36,167 nucleotides of DNA from Octopus bimaculoides (taxonomy: Eukaryota): the NCBI RefSeq assembly GCF_001194135.2, contig NC_068984.1:7549783-7585949 (forward strand). Direction: 5' to 3'. The number at the start of each line of letters is the position of its first letter. Position 1 is the first letter of the stretch. Made by a program: the position numbers and the translations under genes. Under the pieces are notes generated by a model that had not been told where the DNA came from, searched no databases, and was given only the letters and a program-made list of their open reading frames with translations. Positions 1-24,231 of this stretch are shown in pieces.

Positions 1-19
1 TAATTCAGAAAAAATATTA

Positions 20-20
<1 letters not shown>

Positions 21-95
<75 letters not shown>
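21..95. repeat. (TAA)n microsatellite
   Basis: Perfect TAA run, read directly. Confidence 0.98.
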
Positions 96-98
<3 letters not shown>

Positions 99-555
99 TT
101 TTTCTTCAAACTTTTCTTTTTGACGTTGTCTTACTCTCGTTAGGTATTAAATGAAGTTGTCATGCAACGTGAACAGTGTCAATTATCTATAAATACAGAC
201 GGCAACTAACCAAAAATATTTGATTATAGATATTTGTTACAGAATCTATATAGAAGCAGAAATATATTATATAAATTTTGCTGGCCTCTTTTAAACAGTA
301 CCTGCCAAATGTTTACCAATATCCTCGGTGCTATGTGATTTTGTAGTTTGTTGCGGGGTACGTTTTAAATATCTAATTCCCTTCCACCGCAAAGACTTAT
401 TGTTATGATAAGTAGAATACTAACAACAAAGTTCTCTGCCAATGCTAAAAATATGTACGATCCAAACGCGTCATCACATGATACGCATGAAAGGGTCGCC
501 GCTAATGGCCGTGCGTCGGAGCGCATCGACATTTGTGCTCGTTAAGATGCGTCCA

Positions 556-970
556 TCTTTTATGTTTAATTTGTTAGTCATTAGACTACTGTGGCCATGG
601 TGCAGCAGCGCCTTGGCGAACTTTTAGTGGAGTGGATTGATCCTAGTGCTCATAATCCTAAAACCTGGTTAACCGCTAGGTTACGGGGACGTAAACACAC
701 GAACACCGATTCTCAAGCTATGGAGGAGGAGAAATACGCACACGCACACATTCACACACAGACAAACACACACACGCACATATATACACACATATATAAA
801 TATATTTACGACGGGCTTCTTTCAGTTTCCGTCTACCGAATCCACTCAGTAGGCTTCGGTCTGCCCGAAGCTATACTAGAAGATATTTCCTCAAGGTTTC
901 ACTTGAAAGGACTGAACCCGGAACTAAGTGGTTGTGAATCAAGCCTCGTACCACGCACCCACCCCTGCGC
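556..970 (-). mobile_element. SINE family A copy (tRNA-like head, internal CA/TA microsatellite, tail), degenerate
   Basis: Shares tacgacgggcttctttcagtttccgtctacc, gactgaacccggaac and ttacggggacgtaaacac blocks with the copies at 22116-22690 and 34364-34817. Confidence 0.9.
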
Positions 971-1218
971 CATCTCTTTTTAGCTTGCAGCTGACGCATT
1001 GAGATGATCTACTCAGTACTTTTCCAGGGTTAATTGTCAGCTTTTGCTTCATCCGTCTTCAATCCATCTCTGCTATCTCAAAGAGGCTGCTCTCACTCAT
1101 CATTGTACGTCACGTTCGAAATTAACCAAAGTCCAATCCTCATCCTAGAATCGTATCAAATAAAGGCTCTGCACACGACCACTATCGTCCATAGCTCTCC
1201 CAACATCGATTTCCCGTT

Positions 1219-1748
1219 GAGTCGTGGTTCTGTGGTAAGAAGTTTCCTTCCCAACGTCATCGTTCCAGGTTTAATCCCACGCCCAGGCATGTATATTCAT
1301 CTATAGCCTCGGCCCTAGCAATGCTCTGCGAGTACGTTTGATAGACAGTATCGACCAGAATATCGGATATTCTTATACAAGGCTGGTCTCAGTGCACTCC
1401 CTATTGTTGCAGCTTTCGACAAATACTACCCACTCTGGTTAGGCAAGTAGGCGATGTGTGTGTGTGTGTGTGCGTGTCTGTGTGTGTGTGCGCGCACGTG
1501 TGAGTGCGTGTGTATGTCTGTGTGTATTTCTGTGTCTGTGTTTGTTCCACACCAGCGTTTGACAACCTGTGTTGGTATACTTATGTCATCATAACTTAGC
1601 GGTTCGGTAAATGATACCGATAGCATAATTGCCAAGCTTAACAAAAATGGTAAGCACTACTGGTCGATTCATCCACCTAAAATGTACTTCTAGGGTCGGC
1701 TCCAATGTGGCTGCAGTCTAAAGATTGTTACATGAAAAACAAAAGAGA
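1219..1748 (+). mobile_element. SINE family A copy, old and interrupted, with (TG)n at about 1455-1545
   Basis: Head gtggttctgtggtaagaag...ctatagcctcgg (1219-1345). Tail ttgacaacc...cataacttagcggttcgg...gataccgatag...ggctgcagtc (1540-1748) is the reverse complement of the minus-strand copies. Confidence 0.75.
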
Positions 1749-1847
1749 TATTCAAGATGGCAGTGCTTTAAACACGACTTTATTTTTTTCTTCAAACATT
1801 TGGGAGTATTCTTTGTTTGTTTTTAATACTTCTTGGCAAAATTTGTA

Positions 1848-2005
1848 CGGTGGCGGAGTCGATAAAATGCCGGACAAAATGCTTTACGATATTAAGTTTT
1901 CGCTCTGTATGTTCTGAGTTCAAATATCTATGAAATCAACTTTGCCTTCTATATTTCCAGTGTCATTCAAACAGAATGACACTGAAATGCAGGGTGAGAT
2001 GGAAT
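1848..2005 (+). mobile_element. SINE family B, degenerate
   Basis: gccggacaaaatgctt...gttctgagttcaaat...caactttgccttc matches 20416-20590 and 32042-32259. Confidence 0.65.
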
Positions 2006-2057
2006 TCAATAAAGCCTTCCTAAACATCTTGGATAAAGCTGCTTCCCGAATCATATA

Positions 2058-2250
2058 AACTCATAGCGTCGGTTTCCCGGTTTCTGAAGCCTATATATTT
2101 TACCAGTAGACGGCATGCCGGTCCACTGCACGATTCGTCGTTTTTGGAAGTTGAGTGGACTGGAACGACGTAAAATGAAGTGTCTTGCTCAAGAGAAGAA
2201 TGCATTGCCCGGTCGAAGAATCGAAGTTACAGACTATCGATCATGAGTCC
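2058..2250 (-). mobile_element. Chimeric SINE: head/core type H2 + tail Y
   Basis: Reverse complement has cttgagcaagacacttc...ccagtccactca (core shared with 35485-35802) and tgcagtggaccggcatgccgtc...aaaccgggaaaccg..ctatgag (tail shared with 10389-10470). Confidence 0.75.
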
Positions 2251-4710
2251 AGTTTTAGATTCCCCAGGATTTTAGAAAAATGTCGCCGTCAACCACTGAA
2301 CAAAGTTTTAAAAGAAAATAGCACTTATATAATTTTCTATCACTAGAATTTTTATCCTGATACCTAATTTAGAAATGTTTTTATTAACCAGGAATAAGAT
2401 ATGGTGGATGGCGAATCGCTAAATAGTGGAGAAACCATAATGGATGCGCTTAATTTCCTCGACCTACATTCTCTGTTCAAATCAGCCATTATCGACATAT
2501 TATTTTAACTACTCCGGGTTCAAAATACAACCACCAATCAAAAACCGGAGTCCGTATAATTAGACCTTTTGCTTAATTAAGAAATTATTAATTAATCGAT
2601 AAAGAAATCGATGCGATTGATATTCATTTTCAAATTTCTATGTCGACATTTGTAAGCAAGACGTGGACAGGAGAAACCATCCAGGAGATCTGCATCTCTT
2701 GCAAGGAATTACTGGGGATAGCGTTTATATCGCGCTTGTACGATGCCGCGAATAACGGAAGTGGGCCTGAATGGTGCAGATTAGCAGTTCAACGGAGCGA
2801 AAACCGTCTTTGTAGAAAGAAACTGTGGTTACGAAGAGGTTTTAGTAGGGTTTTTTATAGTGTTTGGGTCATAAGATTGGCTATATCCAGTTGAAAAGTA
2901 AGCTTTATTCATACATGTATTGCAAATTATATTTCCCATGACAGTCCAGCGAACCGAATGAAAAGAAGAACAACAACCAAGAAACAAATCTACATTAGAC
3001 AAAAGCGGTAGAACGCTAATGCTGAGAACTGGATCGATACTTAGCATAGCTGCATTTAACTCCTTCAGTGGCGCTGCCGCTCATAATGTAGGATTTAACT
3101 GATTCCGTCAATTTGATCAATTGAGGTCCAGGTATGATCTGATCAAACAAACGTAAGTAGAAAAAGCCAACCTGCCCTTGCCATTTTTGCCTTATAATCC
3201 GACATCTTATCTCAAGGATTTTATTATTCCATGAGTTCTTAATTTCTTTTTATATCAGTAGAGTGTGATTTAAGAGTAATTTTCCTGCTATTTCTAGCAG
3301 GTAAAGCGACAACGTAAATGCTCTCTTGTTGCTCAGGGCGTTATTAAATATTCACCAACTATGGATGTCAGATTTTGATTTTGATATAAATATGTCAATG
3401 TGACTGAACCATTCATTTCAATTCAAACAAGGTAGGAATCCATGAGTAGAATTATAATGAATAGACGAATTGGTGTATCAACTCGTTTCATGCATACAAA
3501 TATATATTGTTCAACATCTCTCACTACATCTATTATTTGTCACTCGCACTGCGAACAAGTGCAGGTTTAATTTCCAGCCTCTTCACTTTGAAACTGGATC
3601 TGACACAGAACCGGTTGCGATCCAGGAATTCTTTGGAGAAAGTAGCAAAGTTCACTCCCAGATTATTGATTACAAATAAAATATCTTAACAATAATAGAA
3701 AGTGAGAATGTCATTTCTTCAGGCATTTAATGCTATATGTGCAGCTACTGGTTGCGCTAATGATTACAGGTGAATTAATAGTAAGTGGACACACACGGAC
3801 AGCAAAGAGCGACTACATGAATGCTTTTCGTTTAGTAACGATAGATGACTGCCTTTGTAATTTAGTTTAAGCCTTGATTCATAAAGATTGGCATAAGCGC
3901 GGATTCGGTGAACTGCTTCCATTAGATTTATTATTAAACTATCCCTTTCCACTCAAGAAATATTTATTTTAATGTTCCACTGATTGTTTTCCTATGAAAA
4001 GCTGATAGAATGTCTTTCTAAGGTGAATGCTATTCTATACATGTGTTATATATGAATGTTATATATCTGTGTATAGGAAATACGCAATTAGGAAGCTACT
4101 AACAAAAGGCTTTCTGCAACATTTTCTCCCGAAAGGCATGAACAGGAATCCTAAGATTACTTGAGAAAAGAAAATTAGAGGTTATGACGTCAGTGAAGTG
4201 AAACAACGACAAAAGAAACTGAAAACTCTGTAAGAAAATAAAAACCGAAAGGAGGTTATTTCTCTCGTTATACAACACACAATATGGACTCCATAAATAT
4301 TGTATTTACTGAGATAATGGCCGACATTTAAATCTGAGAACAATCAAACTATCTTGTCTACTTCAGCCCAAATATAACTTTTATGTCATTTCTAAGGAAA
4401 ATGCAGATTTAAAATAACGATTTTATCAGTTCAATGTAGCAGCTAATCTTGGGGTTAGACAAACTACAAGCGATTTTCTTTAGGAATGAATTTAAAATTC
4501 AGATTCATTTGTATAGCAAATGACTAAGCCATTTCAATTTCAAACGTAAGATGTCGCTTAGAGATGTGAAGCGTCTTATATGCTGGATTACAGGATTGAA
4601 CTAAATATTTAAGTGAAATTTTGAGAACGAAAATCTCATTTTTCTCCTAAGTATGCATTTTTTCGAGGCGTCCTGGGTTCATAAATGTTTTACAACCCCA
4701 ACTTCATGTA

Positions 4711-4730
4711 TAATAATAATAATAATAATG

Positions 4731-4797
<67 letters not shown>
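4711..4797. repeat. (TAA)n microsatellite
   Basis: Near-perfect TAA run with one TGA. Confidence 0.98.
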
Positions 4798-4798
<1 letters not shown>

Positions 4799-5032
4799 CA
4801 CGCATCCAAAACCATATCCTACGTAAAATACTATGTAATCTCAAATTTTAAATCAAACTTATAATTTTCTTATGGTTTCTTACACATTCTCTAGAACAAC
4901 ACTATGTACAACACCAAATATATAGCACCCTAAGCATAACACCAGCATGAACTTCTAACTTGTTGTCTCTTGAGGTCTGTGGGTGAAACTTGGAGCCAAC
5001 TTGTACAAATACAAAGCAAAAGTGAAACATAA
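4798..5032 (+). mobile_element. 3'-terminal fragment of R4/Dong-clade non-LTR retrotransposon (ORF C-terminus + 3' UTR)
   Basis: 4813 onward reads HILRKIL, like the (T)AHILRK(I/V)LS C-terminus of R4/Dong-type ORFs. The UTR is roughly 80% identical by eye to rc(16258-16500) and ends directly in (TAA)n. Confidence 0.75.
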
Positions 5033-5085
<53 letters not shown>

Positions 5086-5090
5086 TGATG

Positions 5091-5176
<86 letters not shown>
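5033..5176. repeat. (TAA)n microsatellite, LINE tail/target
   Basis: Direct; source of the poly-I and poly-Y ORFs in the track. Confidence 0.98.
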
Positions 5177-5177
<1 letters not shown>

Positions 5178-7230
5178 GTCAAGAAAAAGAAACATAACGG
5201 GAGTGACAAAAGAAAAGATCCATGGTGGAAAAGAAGAATACAGGTAGGGTTAGACATACTCTCGATGGAAATCTCTGTGTTAGACCGAAAAGAGAAAGGA
5301 GAGCTTAAAGCGAACAAAAATACAGGGCGCTGAAAACGAAGTATAATATTGAAAGAAAGGACTTGAAAGTGGTGATGGAGCAACTGAAACAGCGTCTCGT
5401 TGCAAAGAAAGCAAAGATGATAAGATGCGACCAAAGAATGAAGGGTCACCACCAGAATAAGCTATTCAGAGTAGATCAGAAGAGATTCTACAAAGAAATA
5501 ATTGGAGAGTGTACAGATGAAAAGTTGATACCAGATAACAATGAAAGTCAAAGGTTTTGGAGTGACATCTGGAGCAAAGACAAGGAGCACAAGAAGGATG
5601 CTGAATGGTTGCAAGAACTGAAACAAACAGTAGTCTGTCCAAAACAGGCAGAACTAGTCATCTCAGTTAGGGAAGTGAAGGAAATTAGCAAAAAAAAAAA
5701 AAAAAAAAAAATAGAAATAGAATGAGCAACTGGAAGGTCCCGGGAGTAGATGGAGTTCAAGGCTACTCAATCAAAAGATTTGGTGAACGTCATGCACGAA
5801 TAGCTGCGCACCTCAACGCCTTGTTAAATGCCGACCAAGTAAAACATCGAAAAAGGCAATACGGTAGACGATTACAGGCCGATATCCTGTTTGCCACTTA
5901 TATGGAAGTTATTGGGTGGAATACTCGCAGATTCAATTTACGAACATCTGGAAAAAAATGGAGTCCTGCCACATGAGGAGAAGGGTTGCAAGCGTAAGTG
6001 CAGAGGTACCAAGGATCAACTCCTGACAGACAAAACTGTATTAGAGATAGCAAGAGGAGGAAAAGTAACTTAGCCATGTCATAGATCAGCTATCGAAAGA
6101 CGTACGATACGATCACACATTCTTGGATTATGGAGTGTATGAACCTATTTGGTATTGCATCGAATGTTGAGCGATTGCTTCGAAAAAGTATGGCGAATTG
6201 GAGGACGGACCTGAAAGCATACGGAAGAAATTTAGGGACAGTAGAAATTAGGAGGTGCATCTTCCAATGGGACTGCCTGTCCCTACTCATCTTTGTACTG
6301 TGCTTGATACCACGAACACTGATTCTGAGGAAAGCAAAAGCTAGGTATATATTCAAAACCCGCCAACAAAAAGTCAACAATCTTTAATCATGGATGATGT
6401 CAAACTTTATGGTAAAGATGAATCCCAAGTCAGTTCCCTCGTTGATACGGTGTATACTTTCAATGATGATATCAGAATGGAGTTCGGACTGAAAAGATGG
6501 GGTGTGTTATTATTGAAGAGAGACAAAATCAAATGTATGGACGGGCTAGCGATACTATCGGGGAAGGTTATGAAGCAGATAGAAGAGACGGGCTATAAGT
6601 GCTTAGGGATTTTGAAAATGGATAAATTGATGGAGAAAGAAATGACAGAAAAATTGTAGGTGGAGTACTTGTGCAGACTGAGACTGATCCTTAAGTCGAA
6701 ATTAAACGGACGGAATATGATCGAATCTATCAACACCTGGGCGGTTTCACTCCTTAGATATGGAATAGGGTTAATCGCATGGACAGTAGACGAACAAAAC
6801 AGCTCAGACAGAAAGACAGAGACGTTGCTAACTAGATATGGGTCACTCCACTCAAAAAGTGACACAGACACTGTATGTACCAAGAAAAAGAGGGGAACGA
6901 GGACTTATTGGATGTGAACACAGCATTAGAGAAGAAGGAAACAACATAGCATGGTATGTAAAAAATGCCACAGAACCGCTATTATTAGAAGTAAGAAGGT
7001 CAGGCTTGTGTAGGATGAAAGATTGCAGAGATAAAGCACTATACAGGAAATTGAAAACGAATGAAAGTGAAAATAGGTGGGTAAAGAAAAGAATGCATGG
7101 TCAATTTCATAGGGATATTGAAGATAACAGAGAGAAGAGATGGCTGTGGATGACTAAAAGTGATTTAAAACCGGAAACGGGGGGTCTAACCTGTGCAACC
7201 CAAAAGCAAGCACTAAGAACAAAATACATG
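5177..7230 (+). mobile_element. Decayed R4/Dong-clade (RLE-type) non-LTR retrotransposon, reverse-transcriptase region; frameshifted, truncated at both ends
   Basis: Motifs across frames: [42 protein letters not shown] (5873-5896), [22 protein letters not shown] (for IFQGDSLS), MDDVKL (6390), YKCLG, INTWAVSLLRY, LYVPRKRGERGL, KRMHGQF, QALRT. Multiple stops and frameshifts. Confidence 0.92.
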
Positions 7231-7451
7231 ATATTGCTTTCAAATTTTGGCACAACGACAGCACGTTCGGGAGAGGTGTAAATCGTTTACATCGACCTCA
7301 CTGCTTAACTGGTACTTCTTATTTTATCAATCCCGAAAGGAAGAAAGACAAAGTCAACCTCGGTGGAATCTGATCTTAGAACGTAAAGATGGACGAAATG
7401 CCGCTAAGCATTTTTTCCGACGGGCTAGCAATTCCATCAGCTCGCTTTCTT
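7231..7451 (-). mobile_element. SINE family B
   Basis: ctggtactt..tttatc..cccgaaagga.gaaag.caaagtcaacctcggtggaat...gaacgta...gacgaaatgccgctaagcattt matches the other B copies. Confidence 0.9.
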
Positions 7452-7755
7452 GAATGATCATATTAATATTAGTCTTCAATAGGCACTTTTCTGGGTCACT
7501 TCAGTTAATTGGGAATTAGATCGTAATGGACCGCATTATTCTCTAGAGTTCACTCTGTCACTTTCGTCCGCCGCTCAATCCACTCTGACAAGTTTGTCTT
7601 GAGTAACAATGAATTCGAGTGAAATAAAGTGACCCCGGTATATTAACCATGCTTTTCTGATATTATTCTGATATTTTTCAATGCCAAATTTTCCTGGAAA
7701 CACAATGTTTCTAAGGAATAGCTTACCAAAATTAATAAGAAACTAAACTAGATTC

Positions 7756-8109
7756 GGAGTAAAGATTATTTGCCAACATAACATGGCAGTCCTGGTTTAG
7801 GACGAATGTTGCTGTAATTTAGCCCCAGGAGATATCGTCTCCAGCTGGCGAAACGACACGATCTTTGTCCTTATATTTTCGAACAAGGGAATCTAGCGCC
7901 CCCACTCAGCTCAAAGCAATATCTGTGTATCGCGATACACAGGTATTGTTTTGAACTGAGCAGGGGTGCTAGATTCCCTTGTTCAAAAATACAAGGACAC
8001 AGTTCGTGTCGTATAGCCAGCTGGAGACGATGTCTCCTGGGGCTAAATTACAGCAACATTCATCCTAAACCAGGACTGCTACATTATGTTGGCAAATAAT
8101 CTTTACTCC
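7756..8109. mobile_element. 354-bp loopless palindrome (foldback/MITE-like element)
   Basis: 177-bp arms, gapless, 17 mismatches by hand count (about 90% identity), centre atcg|cgat at 7932/7933. Flanked by the 13-bp direct repeat ctaaactagattc (7743-7755, 8162-8174). Confidence 0.9.
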
Positions 8110-8854
8110 AAAGTACTGTTGCTGAATATCTCTTGTTTTGAGATTTACAAATAGTAATTTTCTAAACTAGATTCCTTCAAATATTTAAACCGCAAACATT
8201 CATTAATAAAAAAAGTACATAACTTCCGAACAAATAAATGGATTTTCGTGCAACCTTCATCATTCTTTGTTACATTGAACAATAAACAATACTGGATAGA
8301 GTGAATATTGACATAAATTCCATAGTTATAGCGTTATTGTAAAAAAAATTACAAAGCCTCCATTTTTCGGAGTTTAGGGGGCTTGGGGGAGTAAATGCCT
8401 GTGATTGGTCTCAGCGAAAATTTAGGATTTTTCTAGTAAACAAATATAGTAACCTTTTAGCCCTCAGGAATTTTCCATTTCCACAATTAATTATTTTCAC
8501 TCCACCCTGATACTCAGCCGGTATGTAAGGAGTGCGGGTACAAGTCCTGTGACAGTCTGCTGATAAATTTCGCGTCTTATTAGGCTAAAATACGCAATCT
8601 TTCTGCCTGTTTTCACTGCTATGCTGCGTTCGAAATATTACCTGTCTGTATGATAAAACAAAATCTTTGTTCTTTGGTTCTGTTATAAATATTTACGCTG
8701 TATGATTAATAGTAGTATATTTGAATCGGATTTCATCAAAAGCCAGGTTATTAATTATTCTACTACTAAAGCTAGAGTGTTAGATAATATTTCTTTGGCT
8801 TGATATAGAGTTGTTATTAGAATAACATAGGAATTACTGCAGTAAAATACTTAC

Positions 8855-8974
8855 ACATGCATTTATATTTGTTCCAATGAAAGCCAGGACCGCAGACACA
8901 TTTATATCCAGACGGATGATCATCACATCTCGGCTCAGTATAGTAAAGCTGATGGCACTTATCGTCGGGGTTCT
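8855..8974 (-). CDS. Internal coding exon (120 bp, phase 1-1) encoding an EGF-like module of an unidentified extracellular or membrane protein
   Basis: Acceptor ttttttattttgtacag| and donor |gtaagt. Translation xNPDDKCHQLYYTEPRCDDHPSGYKCVCGPGFHWNKYKCM has the EGF pattern C..C..GYxCxCxxGF..C; the first Cys is presumably on the preceding exon. Confidence 0.85.
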
Positions 8975-9047
8975 CTGTACAAAATAAAAAAAATACAATT
9001 GAATCTAATTCTGTGATTAAAAATCGAGTAAAATGAAGTACAATATA

Positions 9048-9261
9048 GTGATTTCAAAATTTGGCCACAAGGGCAGCTTGGGGGGGGGGATTAAGTCGAT
9101 TACATCGATCCCCAGTATTTCACTGGTACTTAATTTATCGACCACAAGAAGATAACAGGCAAAGTCGACCTCGGAGGAATTTGAACTCAGAACGTAGCGG
9201 CGGTCGAAATACCGCTAAGCATTCCGTCCTGCTTGCTAACGATTCTGTCAGATCGCCACCT
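9048..9261 (-). mobile_element. SINE family B
   Basis: ggcaaagtcgacctcggaggaatttgaactcagaacgtag...ccgctaagcatt...gctaacgattctgtcagatcgcc. Confidence 0.92.
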
Positions 9262-10203
9262 AAAAGTACAATATAACAACGAAGTACAAACAACAACAAG
9301 TACAGTGTTATGGTAGGTTTTTGAATTTATCCCTCTCAGACCTGGCCCTCTTTGTCTAACTTTACCCTCTACCTGGGCTCTGAGCAAAATATAACCCGTT
9401 ACATATACAGCCCAAGAGTAACGATTGCTTGTAAACTAATGGACAAAACCAGCTGGTATCTTCTTTTTCTACGAGTGGTGTTCATCATCTTAACCTGTTT
9501 CTACCATAGCGGGAATACGGCGTGACGGGGTTAAGTGATATTCTATGGTTTTTTTTTTGTCTTCATTTCCAAAGGTACACACTTGTTTATATTTTCTGTT
9601 TGTAAACATTTTGATGTAGGTCTGGAAAAACGTTATTTTCCAAGTACAGACTACATGTTCAGTTCCACAATAAGACACTTTGGCCAAATATACTGCCATG
9701 GGTAACTTTGGGAAATGAATCTACTTTGACAAACCTGTACTACCTACAGGTACTCTTCTATTTTTAATTATTCGAAATTTCTCTGTAATGAACGATCCGT
9801 TTCCCGACAAAGATACAAAGCAGCAATTTTGAAATGTAAATAACAAAACACATTCTCATTTTGAACTTAGGAAAAGTTTTGCATATTTTTATTGTTCCAC
9901 CTAGAGATAGTATTTGTCAGGCGAGTATTAGCTTGTTGATTTCTTTTTCTGAAAACCCTAGCTTATCCAGAATTGCCACTTAAGCATTTATTGACATAAG
10001 TAAGTCCACCCATTATCATTGGTATAAATGTGTATTCATAACCTGGATATAGAAGTTGGAGGTTTCGAAGCCGTTGTCCGTAGTTATCTACTTTCTCTTT
10101 CATTTTCGAAGAAATATTCAAATCTGTAGAGTAGCTGATACCTTCTCAGTCCCAGACAACGATAGCTGACTCGAGACGTTTGCAATTGTATGTATATTTG
10201 TAA

Positions 10204-10492
10204 GTAGAGGTGCAATGGCCCAGTGGTTAGGGCAGTGGACTCGCGGTCGGAGGATCGCGGTTTCGATTCCCAGACCGGGCGTTGTGAGTGTTTATTGAGC
10301 GAAAACACGAGGCTCCGGCAGGGGTGACCCCTGTTGTATTCTTTCGCCCCAACTTTCTCTCACTCGTTCTTCCTATTTCTTGAGTAACGCTGCGATGGAC
10401 TGGAATCCCGTCCAGCTGGGGGGGAGGAACACATACGCCATACAAACCGAGAAACCGGGCCCATGAGCCTGGCTAGGCTTTATAAGGGCGCA
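10204..10492 (+). mobile_element. tRNA-derived SINE: head H1 + tail Y
   Basis: A-box-like tggcccagtggtta and B-box-like ggtttcgattccc. Head nearly identical to 29923-30030; the 3' part ctgcgatggactggaatcccgtccag...aaaccgagaaaccgggcccatgagcc differs. Confidence 0.92.
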
Positions 10493-10884
10493 AAGAAAAA
10501 GAAAGATGTATGTATGTATGCATGTATGCATGTATCTATGCATGCTTGCACGTCTGTGTGAGTGTTAAACTGAGGTTTGTATCTCAAAGAAAATTTAAGA
10601 GTAAACACGATATATTTATTGGTAGAATATCAGAAGATTGAGGACTGAAGTTAGAGAAAGCTGTTGTAATACAGATGTTGAGTGGGACTTCAAGCTTCTC
10701 CTGCTATCTTATCCAGCCCTTGAGGCAGCACTGAAACTCCTACTCATTATGAATTTTACAATATTTTCTCTAAATTATATATTTATATATTATATATTGT
10801 GAAATTTAATTTAATTTTGATAAATAATTAAATTGAATTTTTTCCCTGTAAATTAGGAATTTTTTTACTTATATCATATATGTA

Positions 10885-11048
10885 TATATTTATGACTGAC
10901 TTTCAATTGCCGTCTACCAAATCCACTAAGACAAGCCTGCGGTCGGCCTGGGTCAATAGTAAGTGATACTTGTCCTAGAGTAGGACTGAACCTGGAACTG
11001 GAATCATGTGGTTGAGAAGCAAACTTATCACACAACCACGCCAGCACC
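10885..11048 (-). mobile_element. SINE family A, head half only
   Basis: ccgtctaccaaatccact...ggtcggcc...ggactgaacctggaac..catgtggtt...cacacaaccac. Confidence 0.8.
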
Positions 11049-11760
11049 ATTGAATAATTCCGAAAGCAAGAATATAATGAGTAAGATAAGCAAAATAAAC
11101 CACACGAGAATAAGATGTAAATATAGCCACATCCTCAATAAAAGTAGATCGAGATAGATTAGAACGGATACCTATATGTTAAACAATGTAATTGATGGAA
11201 GTACTGTGTACATATAAACCAGATGTCTAATGTAATTTAATAAATATTTCACTATCAGAAAAATAATCTCTTTGTTGTGTTGTTTAATCAAACAGAATAC
11301 ATAGCAGATGTAAATATAAGAATATATAACAGATTTAAAGGGATTGCAAACTTTCAGGCAATTTGGTTGCCATGCTAGTGTAAAAAGCATTTACCTACAA
11401 TCCAACAGAATTTGATTTATGTAATAGAAACGTTATTTAATTTTTAAATGATAAAAATACAATTTTAGCGTCGATGTAAAAATCAACAATATGTTTACAC
11501 TACGATCTCTTTATCTGTCGCTGGACTGCAAAAACTGTGTGTAGATTATTTTTTATCTAATTAGTTTACTAATCAAACTAATTTACAACATATTTTGTCC
11601 GACGCTATACTTCGAATTCCCTCCCCACGAAAATAAATGCTTGCTCCTTAACACCAACGGACAAAGCATATGTCGTGTGTGTGCGCGCGCTTGTGTGTGT
11701 AGATAGCTAGATTGAGAAATATAAGATATATATACATGTATAAACATAAAGTTATATACA

Positions 11761-11762
<2 letters not shown>

Positions 11763-11802
<40 letters not shown>

Positions 11803-11855
11803 NNNNNNNNNNTATATATGTACATACACACGCACAAACACACATGCACACGGAA

Positions 11856-11890
<35 letters not shown>

Positions 11891-11891
11891 T

Positions 11892-11926
<35 letters not shown>
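11763..11926. repeat. (TA)n / gap (11803-11812) / (CA)n compound microsatellite
   Basis: Direct. Confidence 0.95.
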
Positions 11927-14228
11927 CTGGAAGTAAGTTTAAGTAAAATTTTATGAATTACAATTTTTCCTTACGGCCTCTTTCTGGTGATAAGCAAAGC
12001 ATTAAGCAGACTCCAACATCTCATAACGAAACCCTTACGAGAAGTGTTTTAAATAAATATTCACTATTTGAATTCATTCTTAATAAACCACCAACACAAA
12101 AACAAAACCTGAAGTAGGAAAAGTAAAACGGATTAGTTTATCTCTCGTTACGCATTATGTTGCTGTTAATAGGTGTACAATAAAACAAACTCATTCCTCT
12201 ACACCTAATCACACCCAATCTCTAACGTCGTCTAAACATTACAATCTAAAACCACCGAGCCATCCTCTACCGACATTTATATTTGCATTAACCGGAATGC
12301 ATATCACCTAATATCTAATTGTCAGGTTAGCAATAAATGCACTAATGGACCTTACAAGCTAATCATTCTCTCACATGCACCGGTCACACATTTACACCTT
12401 TTAAGTTACGCTCCACTAATCATGCGCATACATTTAGAAACACTGACATATATAATGAAGCAGCTCCTCTATCCCGAGTCATTACAAATGAAAATCAATA
12501 ATTTACCACACAATCTGAAACGGACGACAAGTTATATAAGTCATATACCGGAAAAGCAAAGGACTTGTAATCTTTGCACTTCAAAGAGATTGCAATTCTT
12601 TTCAGCTACCGTTAATAAACACAATAAAGCCATATATTATTGCTTTGACAAATGCCTTTCCTCATATCACTATTATAAACTTAATCCTTATCCTCACAGA
12701 CAAAATTCTGTTAGCTTACGCATCGAATTTTTAAAATCCCCTTTAGCTCAGTTTGATTTATTAAAACGTACTTGCTGCCTCAATTAACGCTTATTAACTC
12801 ACACTAATAGTTGTTATATAATAATCAAACTATAATAAATTACCAGTTTCTAACGTTAACATTTAAATTTTAATCCTTGCAAAAAGTAGTCTCGAAATAG
12901 CTTATATAATCCGTAAATTTCTATAAGCCGATAATTCATCCCGTTAGCTTCAGTTCCTGCTCATGCATTGATATTTAAAACAGATTTATTATCCTGCTCT
13001 CAATATATTTTACTCACGTTCCCTTATAATGTCTAGAACTACAAAATACGGGCAACATTTTATTTCTAAAGGCTGTCCGATAGCTATTCTCTATATAGTA
13101 GCCGCGATATTTGCCTGACATGCTGTTACCAGCGCTTCCCACTGTTGACTTTTAGTAGACCGAAATCATGTGATATGGAAATTCCCGGGCCCATGACAGA
13201 CAATTTTCTTCTGCTACAATCTATGTGTGTATTGTTATGCACCAAGCGCCTACAAGAGAGGATTTCTCAAGGATATTAACACATTAGTCGGCGTTCTAAC
13301 AAGCCATCCATGTTTAGTTGGATATAAAGATTACCTTTCGGTATTAATACTGCTTCCGTCGCTAATAATTAATCATTAGATATAATTAGCAAAGGTGGCT
13401 GTCAATGTTATCGTTAAGGAAGAACAACCAGGAAGTAATCGATTCAATAAAATTATAAACAGTACATTTAATATCAATAGTTTCATATTAAAGAACATAG
13501 TTCTCGCCTGTCACACAATCATTAGTAATTAAGGCGCTTCATTTAGCAGAATCGATCCTCAACATGAGAGAGTCTGAAATAAATAAATATTAGATAGTTT
13601 ACCATTTATTTGCTTAATTCCTATAATCCAGTAATGGTGTAAAATCTAGAATCTTTCTTCAAAGAACAGGGTGTCACTTTTCATATAGTTGGTTTTTACA
13701 ACCTCCACCCACCCACTGAGTATTTTTGTACCTTAATATTTAATTCAATGATTATTTTATTTTTGCTCTGTTCCCTAAACCCTCAAACGCACTCAATAAT
13801 TTACACTCAAACAGTGATGTTATTTCTATATAAATAACTTTCAAAATTTCAGTAGAAATTAAAACATCTTCCTTTTGTTCTCAGACACAGAATCCAATAT
13901 TTCTACGGAAAACAATATTTTATCAGAATTTTGTCGGATTCAATTACAATTTCTTTATATTTCCGAAACATACTGCTTTAAGTATGGTATATTCTTATGA
14001 TCTTCTTAATTTCCACCAACGCTTTTTTCTTGCTGCCGTGAAAGACGACTAAAGGTGGTCGAAGTAGGTTTTGCACTTCGACTTCGTAAACCATCATCAG
14101 CAACGACGACCCAGACTCCTGGATTGGAAGGTTTTCGAATGAATGGTGCAATAGTGTCATCCGCCAGGAGTAGGAGCCACCAACAAATGACGGATGCACT
14201 TTCGCACTGTTACAGCGCAAGCCCCCAA

Positions 14229-14410
14229 ACTACTATCACTACTACCAGTATACTACTACCACTACTACTACTACTATTACTTCTACTATTACTACTACTA
14301 CTAATAATAATAATAATAACAAGAAGAAGAAGAAGAAGAAGAAAAAGAAGAAGAAGAAGAAGAAAAAGAAGAAGAAGAACAACAACAACAACAACAATAA
14401 TAATAATACT
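14229..14410. repeat. Compound trinucleotide microsatellite (CTA)n-(TAA)n-(GAA)n-(CAA)n-(TAA)n
   Basis: Direct; source of the poly-L/I/R/T ORF 14055-14435. Confidence 0.95.
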
Positions 14411-16202
14411 ATGTTGCCATTACCCCCCAAAGTAATATCCATATAAATTTAAGTTTTTAACAAGAACTTCTTATAAAAATTCTGTCTTAAAACCAGCTCA
14501 CAGATCTCAGAGCCGTAATTGTCTGGCAAACAAGTTGATCTGAGACTGGTAACTGAAACTAAAATAATTACGGTGTGGGAGACACATGTTAGCCATTACA
14601 AAAAAAAATTGACAAAGGTTGTGTCGCAGCAGAGCAATATTTGTGACCTGGTCGCAGTCGGTGCGACAAAAGTCATGACACCAAATAATAAATGTTTTAA
14701 CGAAGTCTTTGTGTGCTTTTGAAAGAAGAGTACTTTTTTACACGCTATATTTGTTATCATATTTACAACATCCCCTTATACAAAATTGATTCGTTAACTG
14801 ATTAATTCGTGTTTTCTTAAGTTGTCTTTATCTTGCCTGTATTTTCGACCTCAGATTCATATTTCTTCTCCAATGACTATATCATCCGAGTCTAGACTGA
14901 CTCAAAACCTTTCTTAATAACCTCGCAATACAATTACTTTAATTCACCATATAAACTCTGTCATTCTGTCATTTTTCATTTTTACTTATCTCCATAACTT
15001 TGTGGTATATATTACAACACTTTAAACGACTGCCATAACATCTTTTCAAATCTCTCTTCGGCCTTTATATTAAATTAAAATTAATTCTCACTTTGGCATT
15101 TACCACTTCCTATATAAGAACATCAATTAAAAGATACTAAAATCTAATCTCACGTTGATCTCCATCTTCGCTCCGAACTCCATCTAAATCTAACATATCT
15201 TATTAATCTTTCCCGTGGTAAAGTCTGAATATATTGAAATGCCAATGCAGATAATTGTGTACAAGAAACAGTGTAATGACAGAAGCGATACATGACCCTA
15301 CTAAATACATTTATCATGAACTTCAGCGTTCACAAAGCAACAGAGAACAGGTCCTAGAGATAACAGATAGACTTCCTTTAAATTACAAGTTATCGTCTTA
15401 TAATTTAAATGTAAATTAGAAGATGTAATACTGGATATTCCGAAACCGATCAAGGCTAGAGCACTAAGAATCATATATGTCTGTTCGATTAGTTTTAGAC
15501 TGTGCCTAAATGGTGTTCCTAAATTCACTCTACTACATTTAGAAGAGTCAATTTTGCTTTCCAGAATTTGACCGTTACTTCGGAAAATATAAATGCTGCG
15601 TTTAAAACTATGAGAGACAGAATGGCGGCCAATTGATTGATGTACCACAACATCGCATTAAATACTTTGCCATATTTTGTTCCGGCTTTCAATATCCGGT
15701 TTACATTCATCTAACCATCAAGTCGCATCCATGAATGATAAAACTGACACCTTTTAATATTCCGGTGTCAAATCACTTAGTAATATTCTTTCTCTCCAAA
15801 TCAGTGATAATCTACCAAAATAGCTTAAGGATATGAGCATATATTTGCATTGAAGTCGTTTCCCAATTATCTTCAACTTTATTTAACTTGGATATTGCAT
15901 GAACAACATACACTATGTCAACGAACAAAGACGTATTTCTAGGGGTGAATTATTCAAAGCCCAAAGAATTCCACTCAACACATGGCAATGATGATCTCCA
16001 ACTATTCCTGCTCGAGATCAGAGACGCAGGTATCGTCAGCCACTAACGGATATGCTCAACCGGCTAAGATCAAGAAACTGACAAGTGAATCCGTGGTATT
16101 TGCTCTGCTCCATCTTTTTATACCAAGGCAAAACATGTACATAATAACACTTCTAATCATTTAAGATTAGAAGCCATGAGAGCCAATGCCTGGTATTGCA
16201 TC

Positions 16203-16257
16203 ATTATTATTATTATTATTATTATTGTTATTGTTGTTGTTGTTGTTATTATTATTA
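16203..16257. repeat. (TTA)/(TTG) microsatellite, the (TAA/CAA)n tail of the adjacent LINE fragment
   Basis: Direct. Confidence 0.95.
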
Positions 16258-16582
16258 TATAGTTAACATTTGCTTTGTGTTTGTTCAAGTTGGCTCCAAG
16301 TCTCACCCAGAGACCTCAAGAGACAACAAGTTAGAACTTCATGTTGGTGTTATGCCTACAGTGCCATATATTTAGCTTTGCACATAATATTGTTCTGGAG
16401 AATGTTTAAGAAGACATGAAATTTATGAGTTTGTTTTATTTTTTTTTAGTTTGATATTACATAGACAGTATTTTACGTAGGATATGGAGAGTTCATATGA
16501 ACACCAACTTTTGAATTTCTGCCATTTTGTGGTTTCTTGGTATCTGAGCTACGTAGGAGTCAGTCCCTTTTGCTATCTAGAA
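16258..16582 (-). mobile_element. 3'-terminal fragment of R4/Dong-clade non-LTR retrotransposon
   Basis: Minus strand reads IAKGTDSYVAQIPRNHKMAEIQKLVFI*TLHILRKILSM* (stop 16459-16457), then a 3' UTR homologous to 4830-5032 and a TAA-rich tail. Confidence 0.8.
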
Positions 16583-16704
16583 AAGCCAACTAGAAAATGC
16601 CGAGCTTTTTTCGACACTTACTTCACTTCGCTTTGAATGACGTTTCCTCATCTGCCAAAGCCGCCCAAGACGTTTGTGTTGTGTCAAGCCCCGTTGATTT
16701 TTAC

Positions 16705-16803
16705 CGTCAAAGTGTTGGCAATATCGTGGAACTTGGGCAAGAAGTCGTGAACAATGAAGTAGAATATATTGTTGACTAATTTGTTAAAATTGTTGATGCA
16801 AAT
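16705..16803 (-). CDS. Candidate internal exon (99 bp, phase 0-0), unknown product
   Basis: Acceptor ttttttcatttattttaatcatag|, open frame ICINNFNKLVNNIFYFIVHDFLPKFHDIANTLT with 17/33 C-ending codons in an AT-rich background, weak donor |gtaaaa. No recognisable domain. Confidence 0.4.
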
Positions 16804-17688
16804 CTATGATTAAAATAAATGAAAAAAATGAACGAATTTATGTGACAATCTCGTATGCACATTAACAATAAACCAGAATTGCACATTCAACACAAATGCA
16901 AATAAATCTATTGTTAGACATAGAGAACGTCCAATGTAGAAATACTAGTAATTACTAATAGCAGATTGAATGTAGCTTTTAATTAGACTGACGGTAAACA
17001 AACCATATTCGGCTAAATAAAAATTTCATTGCACATACAATATCACTTTACTAACAGTGATTAGATGCCCGTGTATAACTAGGTAGACTTAATTATGGAG
17101 AATGAGGCAACTTCGCCAAAGTCTCGGCACATTCGCTAATGACTGTATAGCGATAATCAGATTAGTTTTGGCTGGTAACCTGAGACCTAACAATTCATGA
17201 AGAACTGTTCAGTGGTATTGAAACATGATAGAAAGCTGCTATTATTTAATGCGTCATTCATAATAGAAAGTTATAGCAATTGAATCAATCAGTGGGCATG
17301 TTAATGTTATTACTTGTTAATTAGGCAGCAATATATATATAGTAACACAAGGATAGTTGCTAATATGTACCGGCGTAAATCAATTACCAAATATAACCAT
17401 AAACTGATATATCTATGCGTCACGTGAACAGTTAATCTCAATGTATGTCCTGATGAAGGATCGAACGAGAAATTCTTGTCTCAAATTATTCTTCTCATTA
17501 TACACCAACATATAAATTCATTTATTGCATTTGAATGTGTTTCCACATGCAGCTGTCGACATTTTTCCATCCAAGGCATTTTTAACAAATATTCTATTAC
17601 ATGATATTATTTACGGTTCTATCTGCTTTTAGTTGAAAAATAATGATTTACTTCATATCTCTTGGAGTTTCTAAATGTTCATAATGCA

Positions 17689-18525
17689 AAGGCGTGGCTG
17701 TGTGGTAAGAAGCTTCCTTGGCAACCACATTGTTCTGGTTTCAATTCTGCTGCGTGTGAACTTAGGAAGACAGACTTCTACTATAACTAAGGGCCGGCCA
17801 AATATATATGTGNNNNNNNNNNNNNNNNNNNNNNNNNNNNNNNNNNNNNNNNNNNNNNNNNNNNNNNNNNNNNNNNNNNNNNNNNNNNNNNNNNNNNNNN
17901 NNNNNNNNNNNNNNNNNNNNNNNNNNNNNNNNNNNNNNNNNNNNNNNNNNNATATATATATATATATATATATATATATACGCACACACACACGCACACA
18001 CGCGCACACATTCACATACCTCAATGTCTATACACACATATATTCACACAGAGTTGAAACGCTCACCCCTTCCTTTCACATTCATAAACATAAGAGTATT
18101 ATTATAGTAGATTATCTCGCAACCGTGGGAACTATGAAAAAATATCACATCACCCTTTCCTTCCTGAATTCATCTATCAACCCTTCGTTTCTCATTCATA
18201 AACAGAACAGTGTTATTATAGTAAATTATCTCGGTAACCATGGGAGCTATGAAAAAACTACAAAGCCCAGCATCACCACTGGATCATTCTACACATCTGT
18301 GTAATTTTTCGCACAATAACACCGAGCCGTTTGACCGTGAATCCCAGACACCTGGTGTTGGTGTGTTGACGTCTTCATAACTTAGCAGTTCGATACAAGA
18401 GAATGATAGAATAAGTACCAGGCTTCAAATAACATAAGCACTAGGGTCTATTCGTTTGACTAACATCGTCAAGGCTGCGCTCCAGCATGGTCACAATCTA
18501 ATAAATGAACCAATTAAATGATAAT
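17689..18525 (+). mobile_element. SINE family A with expanded linker: head 17689-17812, gap 17813-17951, (TA)/(CA) run, tail about 18325-18525
   Basis: Head ggcgtggctgtgtggtaagaagcttcctt..caaccacat..tctggtttcaatt; tail cataacttagcagttcg...gatagaataagtaccaggctt...gctccagcatggtcaca. Whether both halves belong to one copy is inferred. Confidence 0.7.
18067..18257 (+). repeat. Diverged direct duplication, about 76-nt unit, period 114
   Basis: cccttcctttcacattcataaaca...ttattatagtagattatctc..aaccgtgggaactatgaaaaaa (18067-18142) versus cccttcgtttctcattcataaaca...ttattatagtaaattatctc...aaccatgggagctatgaaaaaa (18181-18257). Confidence 0.9.
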
Positions 18526-19747
18526 ACGCGCTTGAAAGAACAACGTTTCTAAAATAGATGCATACAATTGGAAGGGTTTCTTTAGTGCAATAGCTAGAAC
18601 GTCTATCGTGTTTACTGAAGATAAGAGTTCGTGCCCCACAGGCAGCCTTAGAATTTTATTCCTTCAAAGAGTCTTTATTTAACTCGATATTCTGCAAGCT
18701 ATTCTTCATAGCTGTATCTAATTCGAGTTTCCCCGTTAAAAATAATTTACTTTATTTGTCTAATTATAAACTGATTGATGTATCTGTTAATGACGTATTG
18801 ATTAATAATGAATGTGTCCTAATGATTTATAGATTAACTTGTTCATTTAGCAAAAGGATAGGTCACCTAGGTAGTCATTTTGTACCTGCGTAGCCACAAA
18901 GATAAGCTGTTAGCGATTTTACAATACTGCATCTCTTTGCCTGAATCATCAAAGGAAAATCGATTCTGTCAGGTCTGAACACCTATTAGCAAGCCTTGAT
19001 ATCTTGAAAAACAAGTAAGATGCCTGTTATTAATTTTAGAATTTTAACATGTCATATCAGATTATAATTAATTCGGGAGAGTGTTACATTCGAAGCGCTT
19101 CACATACAAGAGCTAAGACAATTCAAACAATTATTACACTTTCATCCATTACCCGCTGCTTTTTATTATGCTATGATGTTTTAATAATCTGCATTAGAGA
19201 ACGTTGATGCCAGGAAAACGTCGACTCTATATTCATTAGTCAACGTATATAATTTATATACATCTTATAATAACAATAGCTTCTGACATTGGCAAATGGC
19301 CAGAAATTTATAGGGGATGAATAATTTGATTCACTTGACTCACAATATGTTGCTGAAGCATATTCTGTAGAGCAGAGAAGATAAACAGATAAAATCGACA
19401 TCGACAGGATTTGAAATAAACATGTAAAAGGATTTAACACAAAATTGCAATTTATTGTGCCCGGCACTAATTGTATCACTCCTGATCTAATATTTTTCTG
19501 GAAAAATCTACTCAACACATATTGTTATCTATAGCACTCTCTTTCTAGCTCTACCAAACATGTAATATCATAAGAACACCTACCGTTGACCCGACACAAC
19601 GTGTATTAATCACACTTATTACATTGGGCATGAGACGTTCTGGCATAACCATTTTGGCGCCGCCTATTTGGCAGCGCTAATTCGATACTGACTTCATAGA
19701 CATTATTTACATTTGACGGATATTTGTCCTCATCTTGTTTGTTGAGG

Positions 19748-19775
19748 AAATATATATATATATATATATGCATGC

Positions 19776-19811
<36 letters not shown>

Positions 19812-20075
19812 NNNNNNNNNNNNNNNNNNNNNNNNNNNNNNNNNNNNNNNNNNNNNATATATAATAGTATAGTATATGTGTGCGCGATGGCGTATGTCTG
19901 TGCATTTTTCTTTGTATTTGTGTTTGAAGGCCACCACTTGACAATCCATGTAAGCTAACGGTTCGAAAAACAAGACCGATAGAATTAGTATCAGTCTTAA
20001 AAAAGTAAACTCGTCGTGGCGGCGTCACAGCATGACCACAGTCCAATAACTTAAACAGGCAAAAAGAAGATATGA
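19748..20075 (+). mobile_element. (TA)n / gap (19812-19856) followed by SINE family A tail
   Basis: ccacttgacaa...acggttcg.aaaa..agaccgatagaat.agta...cagcatgaccacagtc. Confidence 0.7.
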
Positions 20076-20145
20076 CAGCAGCTATTTTGGCTTTATACTG
20101 CCGTTTCATATTGGTAGTAAAACTAGTAATATTACTAGTAACTAG

Positions 20146-20366: not shown

Positions 20367-20415
20367 ACAAGTAACTGGTAATATGAGCGGTTGTTAGTTT
20401 ATACTATTTGAGTCT

Positions 20416-22690: not shown

Positions 22691-22705
22691 ATTCTAATAT
22701 TTTCT

Positions 22706-23945: not shown

Positions 23946-23985
<40 letters not shown>

Positions 23986-23996
23986 TCTCTCCCTCT
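23946..23996. repeat. (CT)n microsatellite
   Basis: Direct. Confidence 0.95.
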
Positions 23997-24228: not shown

Positions 24229-24231
24229 ATA

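What the first reader, a model, noticed from the sequence alone, without database searches (positions are those of the whole stretch)
8855..8974. Hidden EGF-module exon: the window lies partly within an unannotated gene
Seen: canonical splice sites, a symmetric phase 1-1 120-bp exon and the EGF signature GYKCVCGPGFHWNKYKC, missed by the ORF track. Established: EGF modules are typically on phase 1-1 exons. Unusual: only five Cys here, so C1 should be on the upstream exon, and the C2-C3 loop is long (HQLYYTEPR). I cannot name the gene; it could be a lophotrochozoan-specific extracellular protein.
Basis: partly seen in the sequence, partly recalled or inferred. Interest (0 to 1): 0.7.

Follow-up and report, generated by a model that had tools for sequence, protein, structure and literature searches.

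The report
Known octopus adhesion-GPCR EGF-like exon
The 120-bp segment is a real, conserved coding exon, but it is not hidden: it is the second coding exon of an already annotated 356-kb Octopus adhesion G-protein-coupled receptor gene and encodes that receptor's N-terminal EGF-like module.

Summary
On the minus strand, 8974..8855 is a 120-bp phase 1-1 open segment between a pyrimidine tract plus AG and a GTAAGT donor. It encodes (E)NPDDKCHQLYYTEPRCDDHPSGYKCVCGPGFHWNKYKCM.

This peptide is 100% identical to residues 39-78 of Octopus bimaculoides XP_014771943.1 / XP_052822835.1, which RefSeq names "cadherin EGF LAG seven-pass G-type receptor 1 isoform X1". That gene spans 356 kb, so the 36-kb window appears to lie wholly inside it: exon 2 plus parts of introns 1 and 2.

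The protein is an adhesion GPCR: N-terminal hydrophobic stretch (probable signal peptide), EGF-like module, pentraxin/LamG, HRM, GAIN-like region, 7TM. It has no cadherin repeats. Orthologues occur in molluscs, brachiopods, nemerteans, annelids, a flatworm and a hemichordate.

The "missing" cysteine is not C1 on an upstream exon. The five cysteines are invariant in 29 family members, and nothing conserved precedes the first. The flatworm orthologue has a sixth Cys at the C2 position. So the module is C1-x9-C3 with C2 lost, which explains the "long loop".

A related cephalopod's mRNA contig matches the window only across this exon, ending exactly at the donor, with dN/dS about 0.06.

Verdict: real exon, already annotated, low novelty.

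The parts
8855..8974 (-). Second coding exon (120 bp, phase 1-1) of the Octopus adhesion-GPCR gene. It encodes residues 39-78, the N-terminal five-Cys EGF-like module.
   Evidence: Sequence read. 100% tblastn identity to P0060 residues 39-78. 77% nucleotide identity to a related cephalopod's mRNA contig, L001 1474-1595, ending exactly at 8855. dN/dS about 0.06.
8975..8994 (-). 3' splice site of intron 1: pyrimidine tract ttttttttattttgtac followed by AG.
   Evidence: Sequence. PWM rank 47 of 1986. The annotated protein joins L38 to E39 here; the E codon is G from exon 1 plus AG.
8849..8854 (-). 5' splice site of intron 2: GTAAGT.
   Evidence: Sequence. The annotated protein continues M78-S79; the S codon is T from this exon plus CN from exon 3. 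Similarity to the mRNA contig stops at 8855.
8975..36167 (-). 3' part of intron 1 (at least 27.2 kb). Repeat-rich, with six N gaps.
   Evidence: Exon 1 (residues 1-38) was not found by tblastn. The gene spans 356 kb. Repeats and gaps are shown.
1..8854 (-). 5' part of intron 2 (at least 8.85 kb).
   Evidence: Exon 3 (SSALDSRLEFRNK...) was not found by tblastn. A scan of concatenated minus-strand segments found no Pfam domain; the query covered most of window 1260-18968, after two low-complexity segments were left out when chunk 3 was pasted.

Best explanation
Window 8974..8855 (minus strand) is the second coding exon of an annotated Octopus adhesion G-protein-coupled receptor gene: O. bimaculoides XP_014771943.1 / XP_052822835.1, 1055 aa, gene span 356 kb.

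Shown: the exon is bounded by introns in phase 1 on both sides. In the annotated protein it joins exon 1 (residues 1-38) to exon 3 (the start of the pentraxin/LamG domain).

It encodes a single EGF-like module. This module keeps C1, C3, C4, C5 and C6, the C-x-C-x2-G-F core and the C-x-D-x4-Y-x-C-x-C consensus. It has lost C2.

Inferred: residues 1-38 carry the signal peptide, so the module is the first domain of the mature extracellular region, ahead of pentraxin, HRM, GAIN and 7TM. There it most likely acts as a ligand-contact or capping module for the pentraxin domain of a receptor that signals through a secretin-type 7TM.

Inferred: the retained, invariant C4 probably has a partner outside the module.

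The rest of the window is intron, with SINE-like repeats, microsatellites and assembly gaps.
For: - The exon translation is exactly identical to P0060 residues 39-78, and both junction codons fit: G|AG gives E39 and T|CN gives S79.
- The P0060 gene spans 356,302 bp in GCA_001194135.2.
- Pfam on P0060 gives 7tm_2 at 121 bits, Pentaxin at 66 and Laminin_G_3 at 67, with HRM sub-threshold. Orthologues also hit GAIN and HRM.
- An exhaustive HMMER search with the 39-aa peptide found single-stretch hits of 53-68% identity near the N-termini of the longer family proteins. It also hit short genomic ORFs that read through the donor.
- The five Cys, plus Y23, G28, G30, W33 and N34, are invariant in 29 sequences.
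- A 5177-nt transcript contig from SRR23936177 carries an uninterrupted 1054-aa orthologous ORF. It matches the window only at 8976..8855.
- Differences fall 7/5/16 by codon position, giving dN/dS about 0.06.
- An AF2 model of the module has pLDDT 73 and a beta-hairpin at residues 15-19/22-26. Its nearest PDB folds are almost all EGF domains, though none reaches significance.
Against: - Pfam EGF-family models stay below their gathering scores for the module.
- The fold matches are not statistically significant; the best E-value is 0.77.
- The module has five rather than six cysteines.
- I could not compare the window DNA with the O. bimaculoides record because the gene is too long for the tool. 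The species call rests on protein identity, which O. vulgaris shares.
- No RNA-seq from the source species itself was available here.
- The biochemical role of the module is untested.
Confidence: 0.95

Rival explanations
1. One reading: the exon belongs to an unannotated, lophotrochozoan-specific secreted EGF protein, with the first cysteine (C1) encoded on an upstream exon.
For: A short-word search with the 40-aa peptide returned nothing. No other coding exon is visible in the window.
Against: - One search was a false negative of the word index. The identical peptide sits in RefSeq, UniRef and EukProt proteins.
- Family members have no conserved Cys upstream of the first one.
- The six-Cys flatworm orthologue places the extra Cys at the C2 position.
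- The family includes a hemichordate.
Confidence: 0.02
2. The segment is an orphan or pseudo-exon: a dead duplicated fragment of the receptor gene lying elsewhere in the genome, and not spliced.
For: Only one exon of the gene is present in 36 kb. I could not align the window DNA to the annotated locus.
Against: - The exon is 100% identical in amino acids to the annotated protein, with intact canonical splice sites.
- A 356-kb gene for 1055 aa predicts mostly one or no exon per 36 kb.
- The exhaustive search returned no second Octopus copy.
Confidence: 0.03
3. The segment is a chance open frame with an EGF-like motif in non-coding DNA.
For: The Pfam hits are sub-threshold. The window is AT-rich, with 880 stop-free segments of at least 25 codons.
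Against: - The pattern occurred 0-1 times in 300 simulated windows.
- There are homologues in several phyla.
- A related cephalopod's mRNA matches the exon.
- dN/dS is about 0.06.
Confidence: 0

Closest known systems
Octopus bimaculoides RefSeq gene product XP_014771943.1 / XP_052822835.1 / XP_052822836.1 ('cadherin EGF LAG seven-pass G-type receptor 1 isoform X1'), and the O. vulgaris (CAI9721819-21) and Argonauta hians (GAB1599317.1) models
   Same: Residues 39-78 are identical to the window exon in O. bimaculoides and O. vulgaris. This is the same gene.
   Different: Nothing differs at the sequence level. The RefSeq name is misleading: Pfam finds no cadherin repeats, and the protein is 1055 aa. 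True CELSRs are about 3000 aa (my recollection).
Vertebrate pentraxin-domain adhesion GPCRs, especially ADGRD1 (GPR133); also ADGRD2, ADGRG4 and ADGRG6
   Same: Both have an N-terminal pentraxin/LamG-type domain followed by GAIN and a secretin-type 7TM. ADGRD1 is the best PDB sequence match to the GAIN-7TM part, at 126 bits. PTX domains are predicted in four aGPCRs, and the ADGRD1 PTX domain binds PLXDC2 (PMC10687090; PMC13197933).
   Different: - The 7TM is about equally similar to ADGRL2, at 115 bits.
- The best vertebrate hit in the large protein search is only 27% identical over 35% of the query.
- The octopus family adds a five-Cys EGF-like module before the PTX domain and an HRM after it.
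- Orthology to ADGRD was not tested phylogenetically.
Calcium-binding EGF modules (LDL receptor EGF-B, Notch, fibrillin cbEGF)
   Same: - It is a phase 1-1 exon.
- The C3-x8-C4-x-C5 spacing is identical to LDLR EGF-B.
- It matches C-x-[DN]-x4-[FY]-x-C-x-C (the Asx-hydroxylation consensus, recalled from PROSITE PS00010).
- It has G-[FY] after C5.
- HMMER aligns it to LDLR and Notch EGFs.
- The nearest folds are EGF domains.
   Different: - C2 is absent, so the C2-C4 disulfide cannot form within the module.
- The N-terminal [DEQN]-x-[DEQN]2-C calcium-binding consensus is not met (NPDDKC).
- Pfam scores are below threshold.

Membership tests
EGF-like domain (Pfam EGF / hEGF; PROSITE EGF signatures) | Score at or above the Pfam gathering threshold. 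| tested here: not met
   hEGF scores 22.1 bits against a cutoff of 29.3. EGF scores 16.9 against 21.5. Only residues 16-33 are matched.
EGF-like domain (Pfam EGF / hEGF; PROSITE EGF signatures) | Six cysteines forming the C1-C3, C2-C4 and C5-C6 disulfides. | tested here: not met
   There are five Cys and C2 is absent. This is invariant in 29 family members. Only the Macrostomum orthologue has C2. Disulfide connectivity was not testable.
EGF-like domain (Pfam EGF / hEGF; PROSITE EGF signatures) | The C4-x-C5-x2-G-[FYW] core, C6, and EGF-type spacing. | tested here: met
   The sequence is C-V-C-G-P-G-F...C. The C1-x9-C3-x8-C4-x-C5-x10-C6 spacing equals that of LDLR EGF-B apart from C2.
EGF-like domain (Pfam EGF / hEGF; PROSITE EGF signatures) | The EGF fold (a two-stranded major sheet). 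| tested here: inconclusive
   The AF2 model has pLDDT 73 and a hairpin at 15-19/22-26. The top Foldseek PDB hits are nearly all EGF domains, but the best E-value is 0.77.
Calcium-binding EGF (EGF_CA) | The N-terminal [DEQN]-x-[DEQN]2-C consensus plus C3-x-[DN]-x4-[FY]-x-C. | tested here: not met
   The second half is met (C-D-D-H-P-S-G-Y-K-C). The first half is not: the sequence is N-P-D-D-K-C, and the position is not conserved in the family. The pattern was recalled from PROSITE.
Adhesion GPCR (class B2) | A secretin-type 7TM domain. | tested here: met
   Tested on the annotated protein, not within the window. 7tm_2 scores 121.4 bits at residues 731-963 of P0060.
Adhesion GPCR (class B2) | A GAIN domain with a GPS immediately before TM1. 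| tested here: met
   Pfam GAIN exceeds its threshold in four of the seven orthologues scanned (P0001, P0009, P0011 at 30-44 bits), though not in P0060 itself. The four GPS cysteines are present, at C660, C690, C702 and C704. The region aligns to the ADGRL3, ADGRE5 and ADGRG6 GPS.
Adhesion GPCR (class B2) | The autoproteolytic H-L-T/S triad at the GPS. | tested here: not met
   Octopus CAC-H-MQG-VYAITTDM aligns M-Q-G to the HL(T) of ADGRL3 and the HFT of ADGRG6. Not all aGPCRs cleave, so this does not exclude membership.
CELSR / ADGRC (the RefSeq name of the gene) | Cadherin repeats and an EGF/laminin-G array in the extracellular region. | tested here: not met
   Pfam on P0060 and on seven orthologues finds no cadherin domain. 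It finds only Pentaxin/Laminin_G_3, HRM, GAIN and 7tm_2.
ADGRD (GPR133/GPR144) | PTX domain plus GAIN plus 7TM, with 7TM orthology. | tested here: inconclusive
   The architecture is compatible. ADGRD1 is the top PDB sequence hit at 126 bits, but ADGRL2 scores 115. No phylogeny was run.

The most novel reading that the evidence does not exclude
The family-wide, invariant five-Cys EGF-like module has lost C2 but keeps C4. C4 may form an inter-domain disulfide with one of the extra cysteines after the pentraxin domain, C253 or C288 in octopus numbering. That would lock the N-terminal module onto the PTX-HRM unit. The family is an ancient bilaterian adhesion-GPCR lineage, found from flatworm to hemichordate. 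It has no close vertebrate orthologue and a GPS that lacks the cleavage triad.

The only support is a single lineage. Macrostomum has C2 and lacks both C253 and C288.
Probability: 0.25. Interest if true: 0.3.

Novelty: already known. Interest (0 to 1): 0.12.

Why it matters
This matters little for discovery. The exon and its gene have been in RefSeq, UniRef and EukProt since the first Octopus bimaculoides annotation.

There are two practical lessons:
- A bacterial-style ORF track will always miss short internal exons of giant cephalopod genes. Such 'hidden exons' should be checked against eukaryotic proteomes before being called unannotated.
- The automated name 'CELSR1' is wrong for this receptor. 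It belongs to an uncharacterised pentraxin-type adhesion-GPCR family whose N-terminal module escapes Pfam's EGF thresholds.

Tried and rejected
- Short-word homology search with the 40-aa peptide. It found nothing, which later proved a false negative because the identical peptide is in the collection.
- Pfam scan of concatenated minus-strand stop-free segments; the pasted query covered most of window 1260-18968, two low-complexity segments having been left out of chunk 3. It found nothing, and even the EGF hit was lost, so this design is insensitive.
- Passing DNA references that contain stop codons.
- tblastn of all family proteins and of P0060, P0061 and P0087 against the window. Only the one exon matched, so exons 1 and 3 and the alternative-isoform segments are not in the window.
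- blastn of 8300-9600 against the window. The exon is unique and only the adjacent SINE-like element is repeated, so the idea that the exon is part of a repeat was rejected.
- Rfam gathering scan of the window. No hits.
- Pfam on five long window ORFs. No hits.
- Search for further six-Cys relatives using the Macrostomum protein. None were found, so the cysteine covariation rests on one lineage.
- Foldseek on the 39-residue model. The hits are EGF domains, but none is significant.

Full report
**1. The observation**

On the minus strand the sequence reads ttttttttattttgtacAG | AG AAC CCC GAC GAT AAG TGC CAT CAG ... AAA TGC ATG T | GTAAGT. The exon is therefore 8974..8855, 120 bp. Two bases complete a codon at its 5' end and one base starts a codon at its 3' end, which is phase 1-1.

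It encodes NPDDKCHQLYYTEPRCDDHPSGYKCVCGPGFHWNKYKCM, with five Cys, inside a 78-codon stop-free segment at 8820-9053.

With a rough generic splice PWM, the acceptor ranks 47 of 1986 and the donor 115 of 2145 on that strand. EGF-core patterns occur once each in the window. In 300 Markov-simulated windows they occurred 0 and 1 times in total. The other Cys-rich frames in the window are translated microsatellites.

Pfam hits are EGF-family but sub-threshold: hEGF 22.1 bits against 29.3, and EGF 16.9 against 21.5.

**2. What it is**

A short-word search with the peptide found nothing. The exhaustive HMMER search of 1.84 billion representatives found 26 hits.

The informative hits match in one stretch at 53-68% identity. 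In the longer proteins, from about 250 to 1169 aa, the stretch lies near the N-terminus (residues 1-90). These come from Patella, Aplysia, Lymnaea, Elysia, Bulinus, Crassostrea, Lingula and Macrostomum. There are also short ORFs from genomic Logan/ENA contigs that read through the donor site, for example ...CM|CKY and ...CV|GK.

Pfam shows the long proteins to be adhesion GPCRs with Pentaxin/Laminin_G_3, HRM, GAIN and 7tm_2.

Searching with the Patella protein returned Octopus bimaculoides P0060. Its accessions are XP_014771943.1, XP_052822835.1 and XP_052822836.1, and its name is 'cadherin EGF LAG seven-pass G-type receptor 1 isoform X1'.

Its residues 39-78, ENPDDKCHQLYYTEPRCDDHPSGYKCVCGPGFHWNKYKCM, are 100% identical to the window exon. 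The flanking residues fit the phase: L38|E39 is G|AG, and M78|S79 is T|CN.

The exon is also identical in the O. vulgaris models and differs at one residue in Argonauta. The species therefore cannot be fixed from the protein alone. The many N gaps suggest the scaffolded O. bimaculoides assembly, but this is an inference.

**3. Context**

The P0060 gene spans 356,302 bp on a 147.8-Mb record of GCA_001194135.2.

tblastn of P0060, P0061 and P0087 against the window finds only this exon. Residues 1-38 and residues 79 onward are absent. The window is therefore exon 2 plus at least 27.2 kb of intron 1 and at least 8.85 kb of intron 2. One caveat remains: a 115-nt exon 1 could hide in an N gap, the largest of which is 981 N.

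The isoform differences (X1 versus X2, and the long O. vulgaris isoform) lie in the GAIN region and the C-terminus, not here.

**4. Transcript and selection evidence**

A Logan contig from SRR23936177 (L001, 5177 nt) carries an uninterrupted 1054-aa orthologous ORF, so it is an mRNA. Its 90% cluster includes a Sepia pharaonis protein.

blastn between L001 and the whole window gives a single match, window 8976..8855 against L001 1474-1595, at 77% identity. It ends exactly at the last exon base.

Substitutions fall 7/5/16 by codon position, and dN/dS is about 0.06 with dS saturated.

Read-through ORFs from other animals show that the phase-1 intron after the module is conserved. The residue after C-[MVI] is C from T|GT or G from G|GT. 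In the spliced proteins it is S or A.

**5. Which cysteine is missing**

Four results argue against this.

- In 29 aligned family members C6, C16, C25, C27 and C38 of the exon peptide are invariant.
- Upstream of the first Cys there is only the variable N-terminal leader (a probable signal peptide) and a short variable linker, with no conserved Cys.
- The Macrostomum orthologue has ECHADFYCRPECLDRPDGYYCECGPGF...C. This is a canonical C1-x5-C2-x3-C3-x8-C4-x-C5-x10-C6 pattern. Its extra Cys sits where the molluscs have T, H, N or W.
- HMMER aligns the query's DKC...C with the DEC(C1)QDPDTC(C2)SQLC(C3) of LDL-receptor EGF-B, at identical length.

The module is therefore complete on this exon, as expected for a phase 1-1 EGF exon. 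It has lost C2, and the 'long C2-C3 loop' is really the C1-C3 segment.

The C-x-[DN]-x4-[FY]-x-C-x-C consensus is conserved throughout the family. The N-terminal calcium-binding consensus is not (patterns recalled from PROSITE).

An AF2 model built with the 29-sequence alignment has pLDDT 73 and a beta-hairpin. Its nearest PDB folds are almost all EGF domains (Notch EGF12, NELL1, fibrillin cbEGF, factor Xa), but none is significant, with a best E-value of 0.77.

**6. The whole protein and how it probably works**

Pfam on P0060 gives 7tm_2 at 121 bits, Pentaxin at 66 and Laminin_G_3 at 67. HRM is sub-threshold at 17.5 bits, and there are no cadherin repeats.

By sequence against the PDB, the GAIN-7TM part is closest to ADGRD1 at 126 bits, nearly tied with ADGRL2 at 115 and ADGRL3 (101-103). 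The PTX domain is closest to neuronal pentraxin 1 at 83 bits.

The name CELSR1 is therefore not supported. The architecture is nearest to the PTX-bearing aGPCRs: ADGRD1/2 and ADGRG4/6 (PMC10687090; PMC13197933).

Scholz et al. 2019 (PMC6900090) already noted that many invertebrate aGPCR clusters, including O. bimaculoides sequences, lie outside the nine vertebrate subfamilies.

Inferred mechanism: exon 2 supplies the outermost module of the mature ectodomain. Together with the PTX domain it would contact ligand or matrix, and the signal would pass through GAIN to the 7TM.

The ectodomain has 18 Cys:
- five in the EGF-like module;
- C253 and C258;
- C288;
- six in the HRM;
- four in the GPS.

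The odd EGF cysteine (C4, which is C64) could therefore pair with C253 or C288. Macrostomum, which has C2, lacks both C253 and C288. This is one lineage only, and a search for more six-Cys relatives found none.

**7. Distribution**

Orthologues with 37-81% identity occur in gastropods, bivalves, a chiton, cephalopods, a brachiopod, nemerteans, an annelid, a flatworm and the hemichordate Glandiceps talaboti. The family is not lophotrochozoan-specific. The best vertebrate hit in that search was 27% identical over 35% of the query.

**8. Verdict**

This is a real, conserved and correctly delimited exon. It is already annotated and of an ordinary kind, an EGF-like module on a phase 1-1 exon.

The residual interest is small: a family-specific five-Cys EGF variant, a misnamed receptor family, and a GPS without the cleavage triad.

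Noticed in passing
window 9036-9280; also 7222-7445, 20200-20360, 20390-20588, 20648-20790, 24280-24363, 32053-32211, 34885-35054: A SINE-like element of about 160-220 bp lies immediately upstream of the exon, within the intron. It recurs at least seven more times in the window, on both strands, at 70-79% identity. Rfam gives no hit.
   Followed up: partly
window 11803-11812, 17813-17951, 19812-19856, 22403-22527, 26073-27053, 34602-34652: There are six runs of N, 1351 N in total, mostly flanked by (AC)n, (AT)n or (TA)n microsatellites. They look like assembly gaps at simple repeats. A short exon could in principle be hidden in one of them.
   Followed up: no
window 5001-7300 (+): This is a purine-rich stretch on the + strand, with GC skew +0.25 and AT skew +0.37. 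It carries ORFs of 120 and 147 aa (5363-5725 and 6838-7281) that look like decayed retroelement coding sequence. Pfam finds nothing.
   Followed up: partly
window 27340-27771 (-): A 143-aa ORF ends ...LLHPPYSPGLAPE. This recalls the C-terminal motif of mariner/Tc1 transposases, but that is from my memory only. The Pfam scan was negative.
   Followed up: partly
P0060 residues 700-716 (not in the window): The GPS of the octopus receptor reads CACHMQGVYAITTDM. M-Q-G aligns to the H-L-T / H-F-T cleavage triad of ADGRL3 and ADGRG6. Patella (HIPG), Crassostrea (FVPG) and Lingula (YRLG) also lack it. The family is probably not autoproteolysed.
   Followed up: partly
P0060 versus P0023, extracellular cysteines: Macrostomum alone has the C2 cysteine in the EGF-like module. 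It alone lacks both C253 and C288 (octopus numbering), which are conserved in 22-23 of the 24 aligned sequences. This may be a swap between an intra-module and an inter-domain disulfide.
   Followed up: partly
database annotation of P0060 and its orthologues: Automated names disagree and do not fit the domains. They include 'CELSR1', 'ADGRL2-like', 'latrophilin-3' and 'latrotoxin receptor'. No member has cadherin domains in the Pfam scans.
   Followed up: yes
tool behaviour: The word-index protein search reported no candidate for a 40-aa query whose exact sequence is in the collection. Negative results from that tool for short queries should not be trusted.
   Followed up: yes
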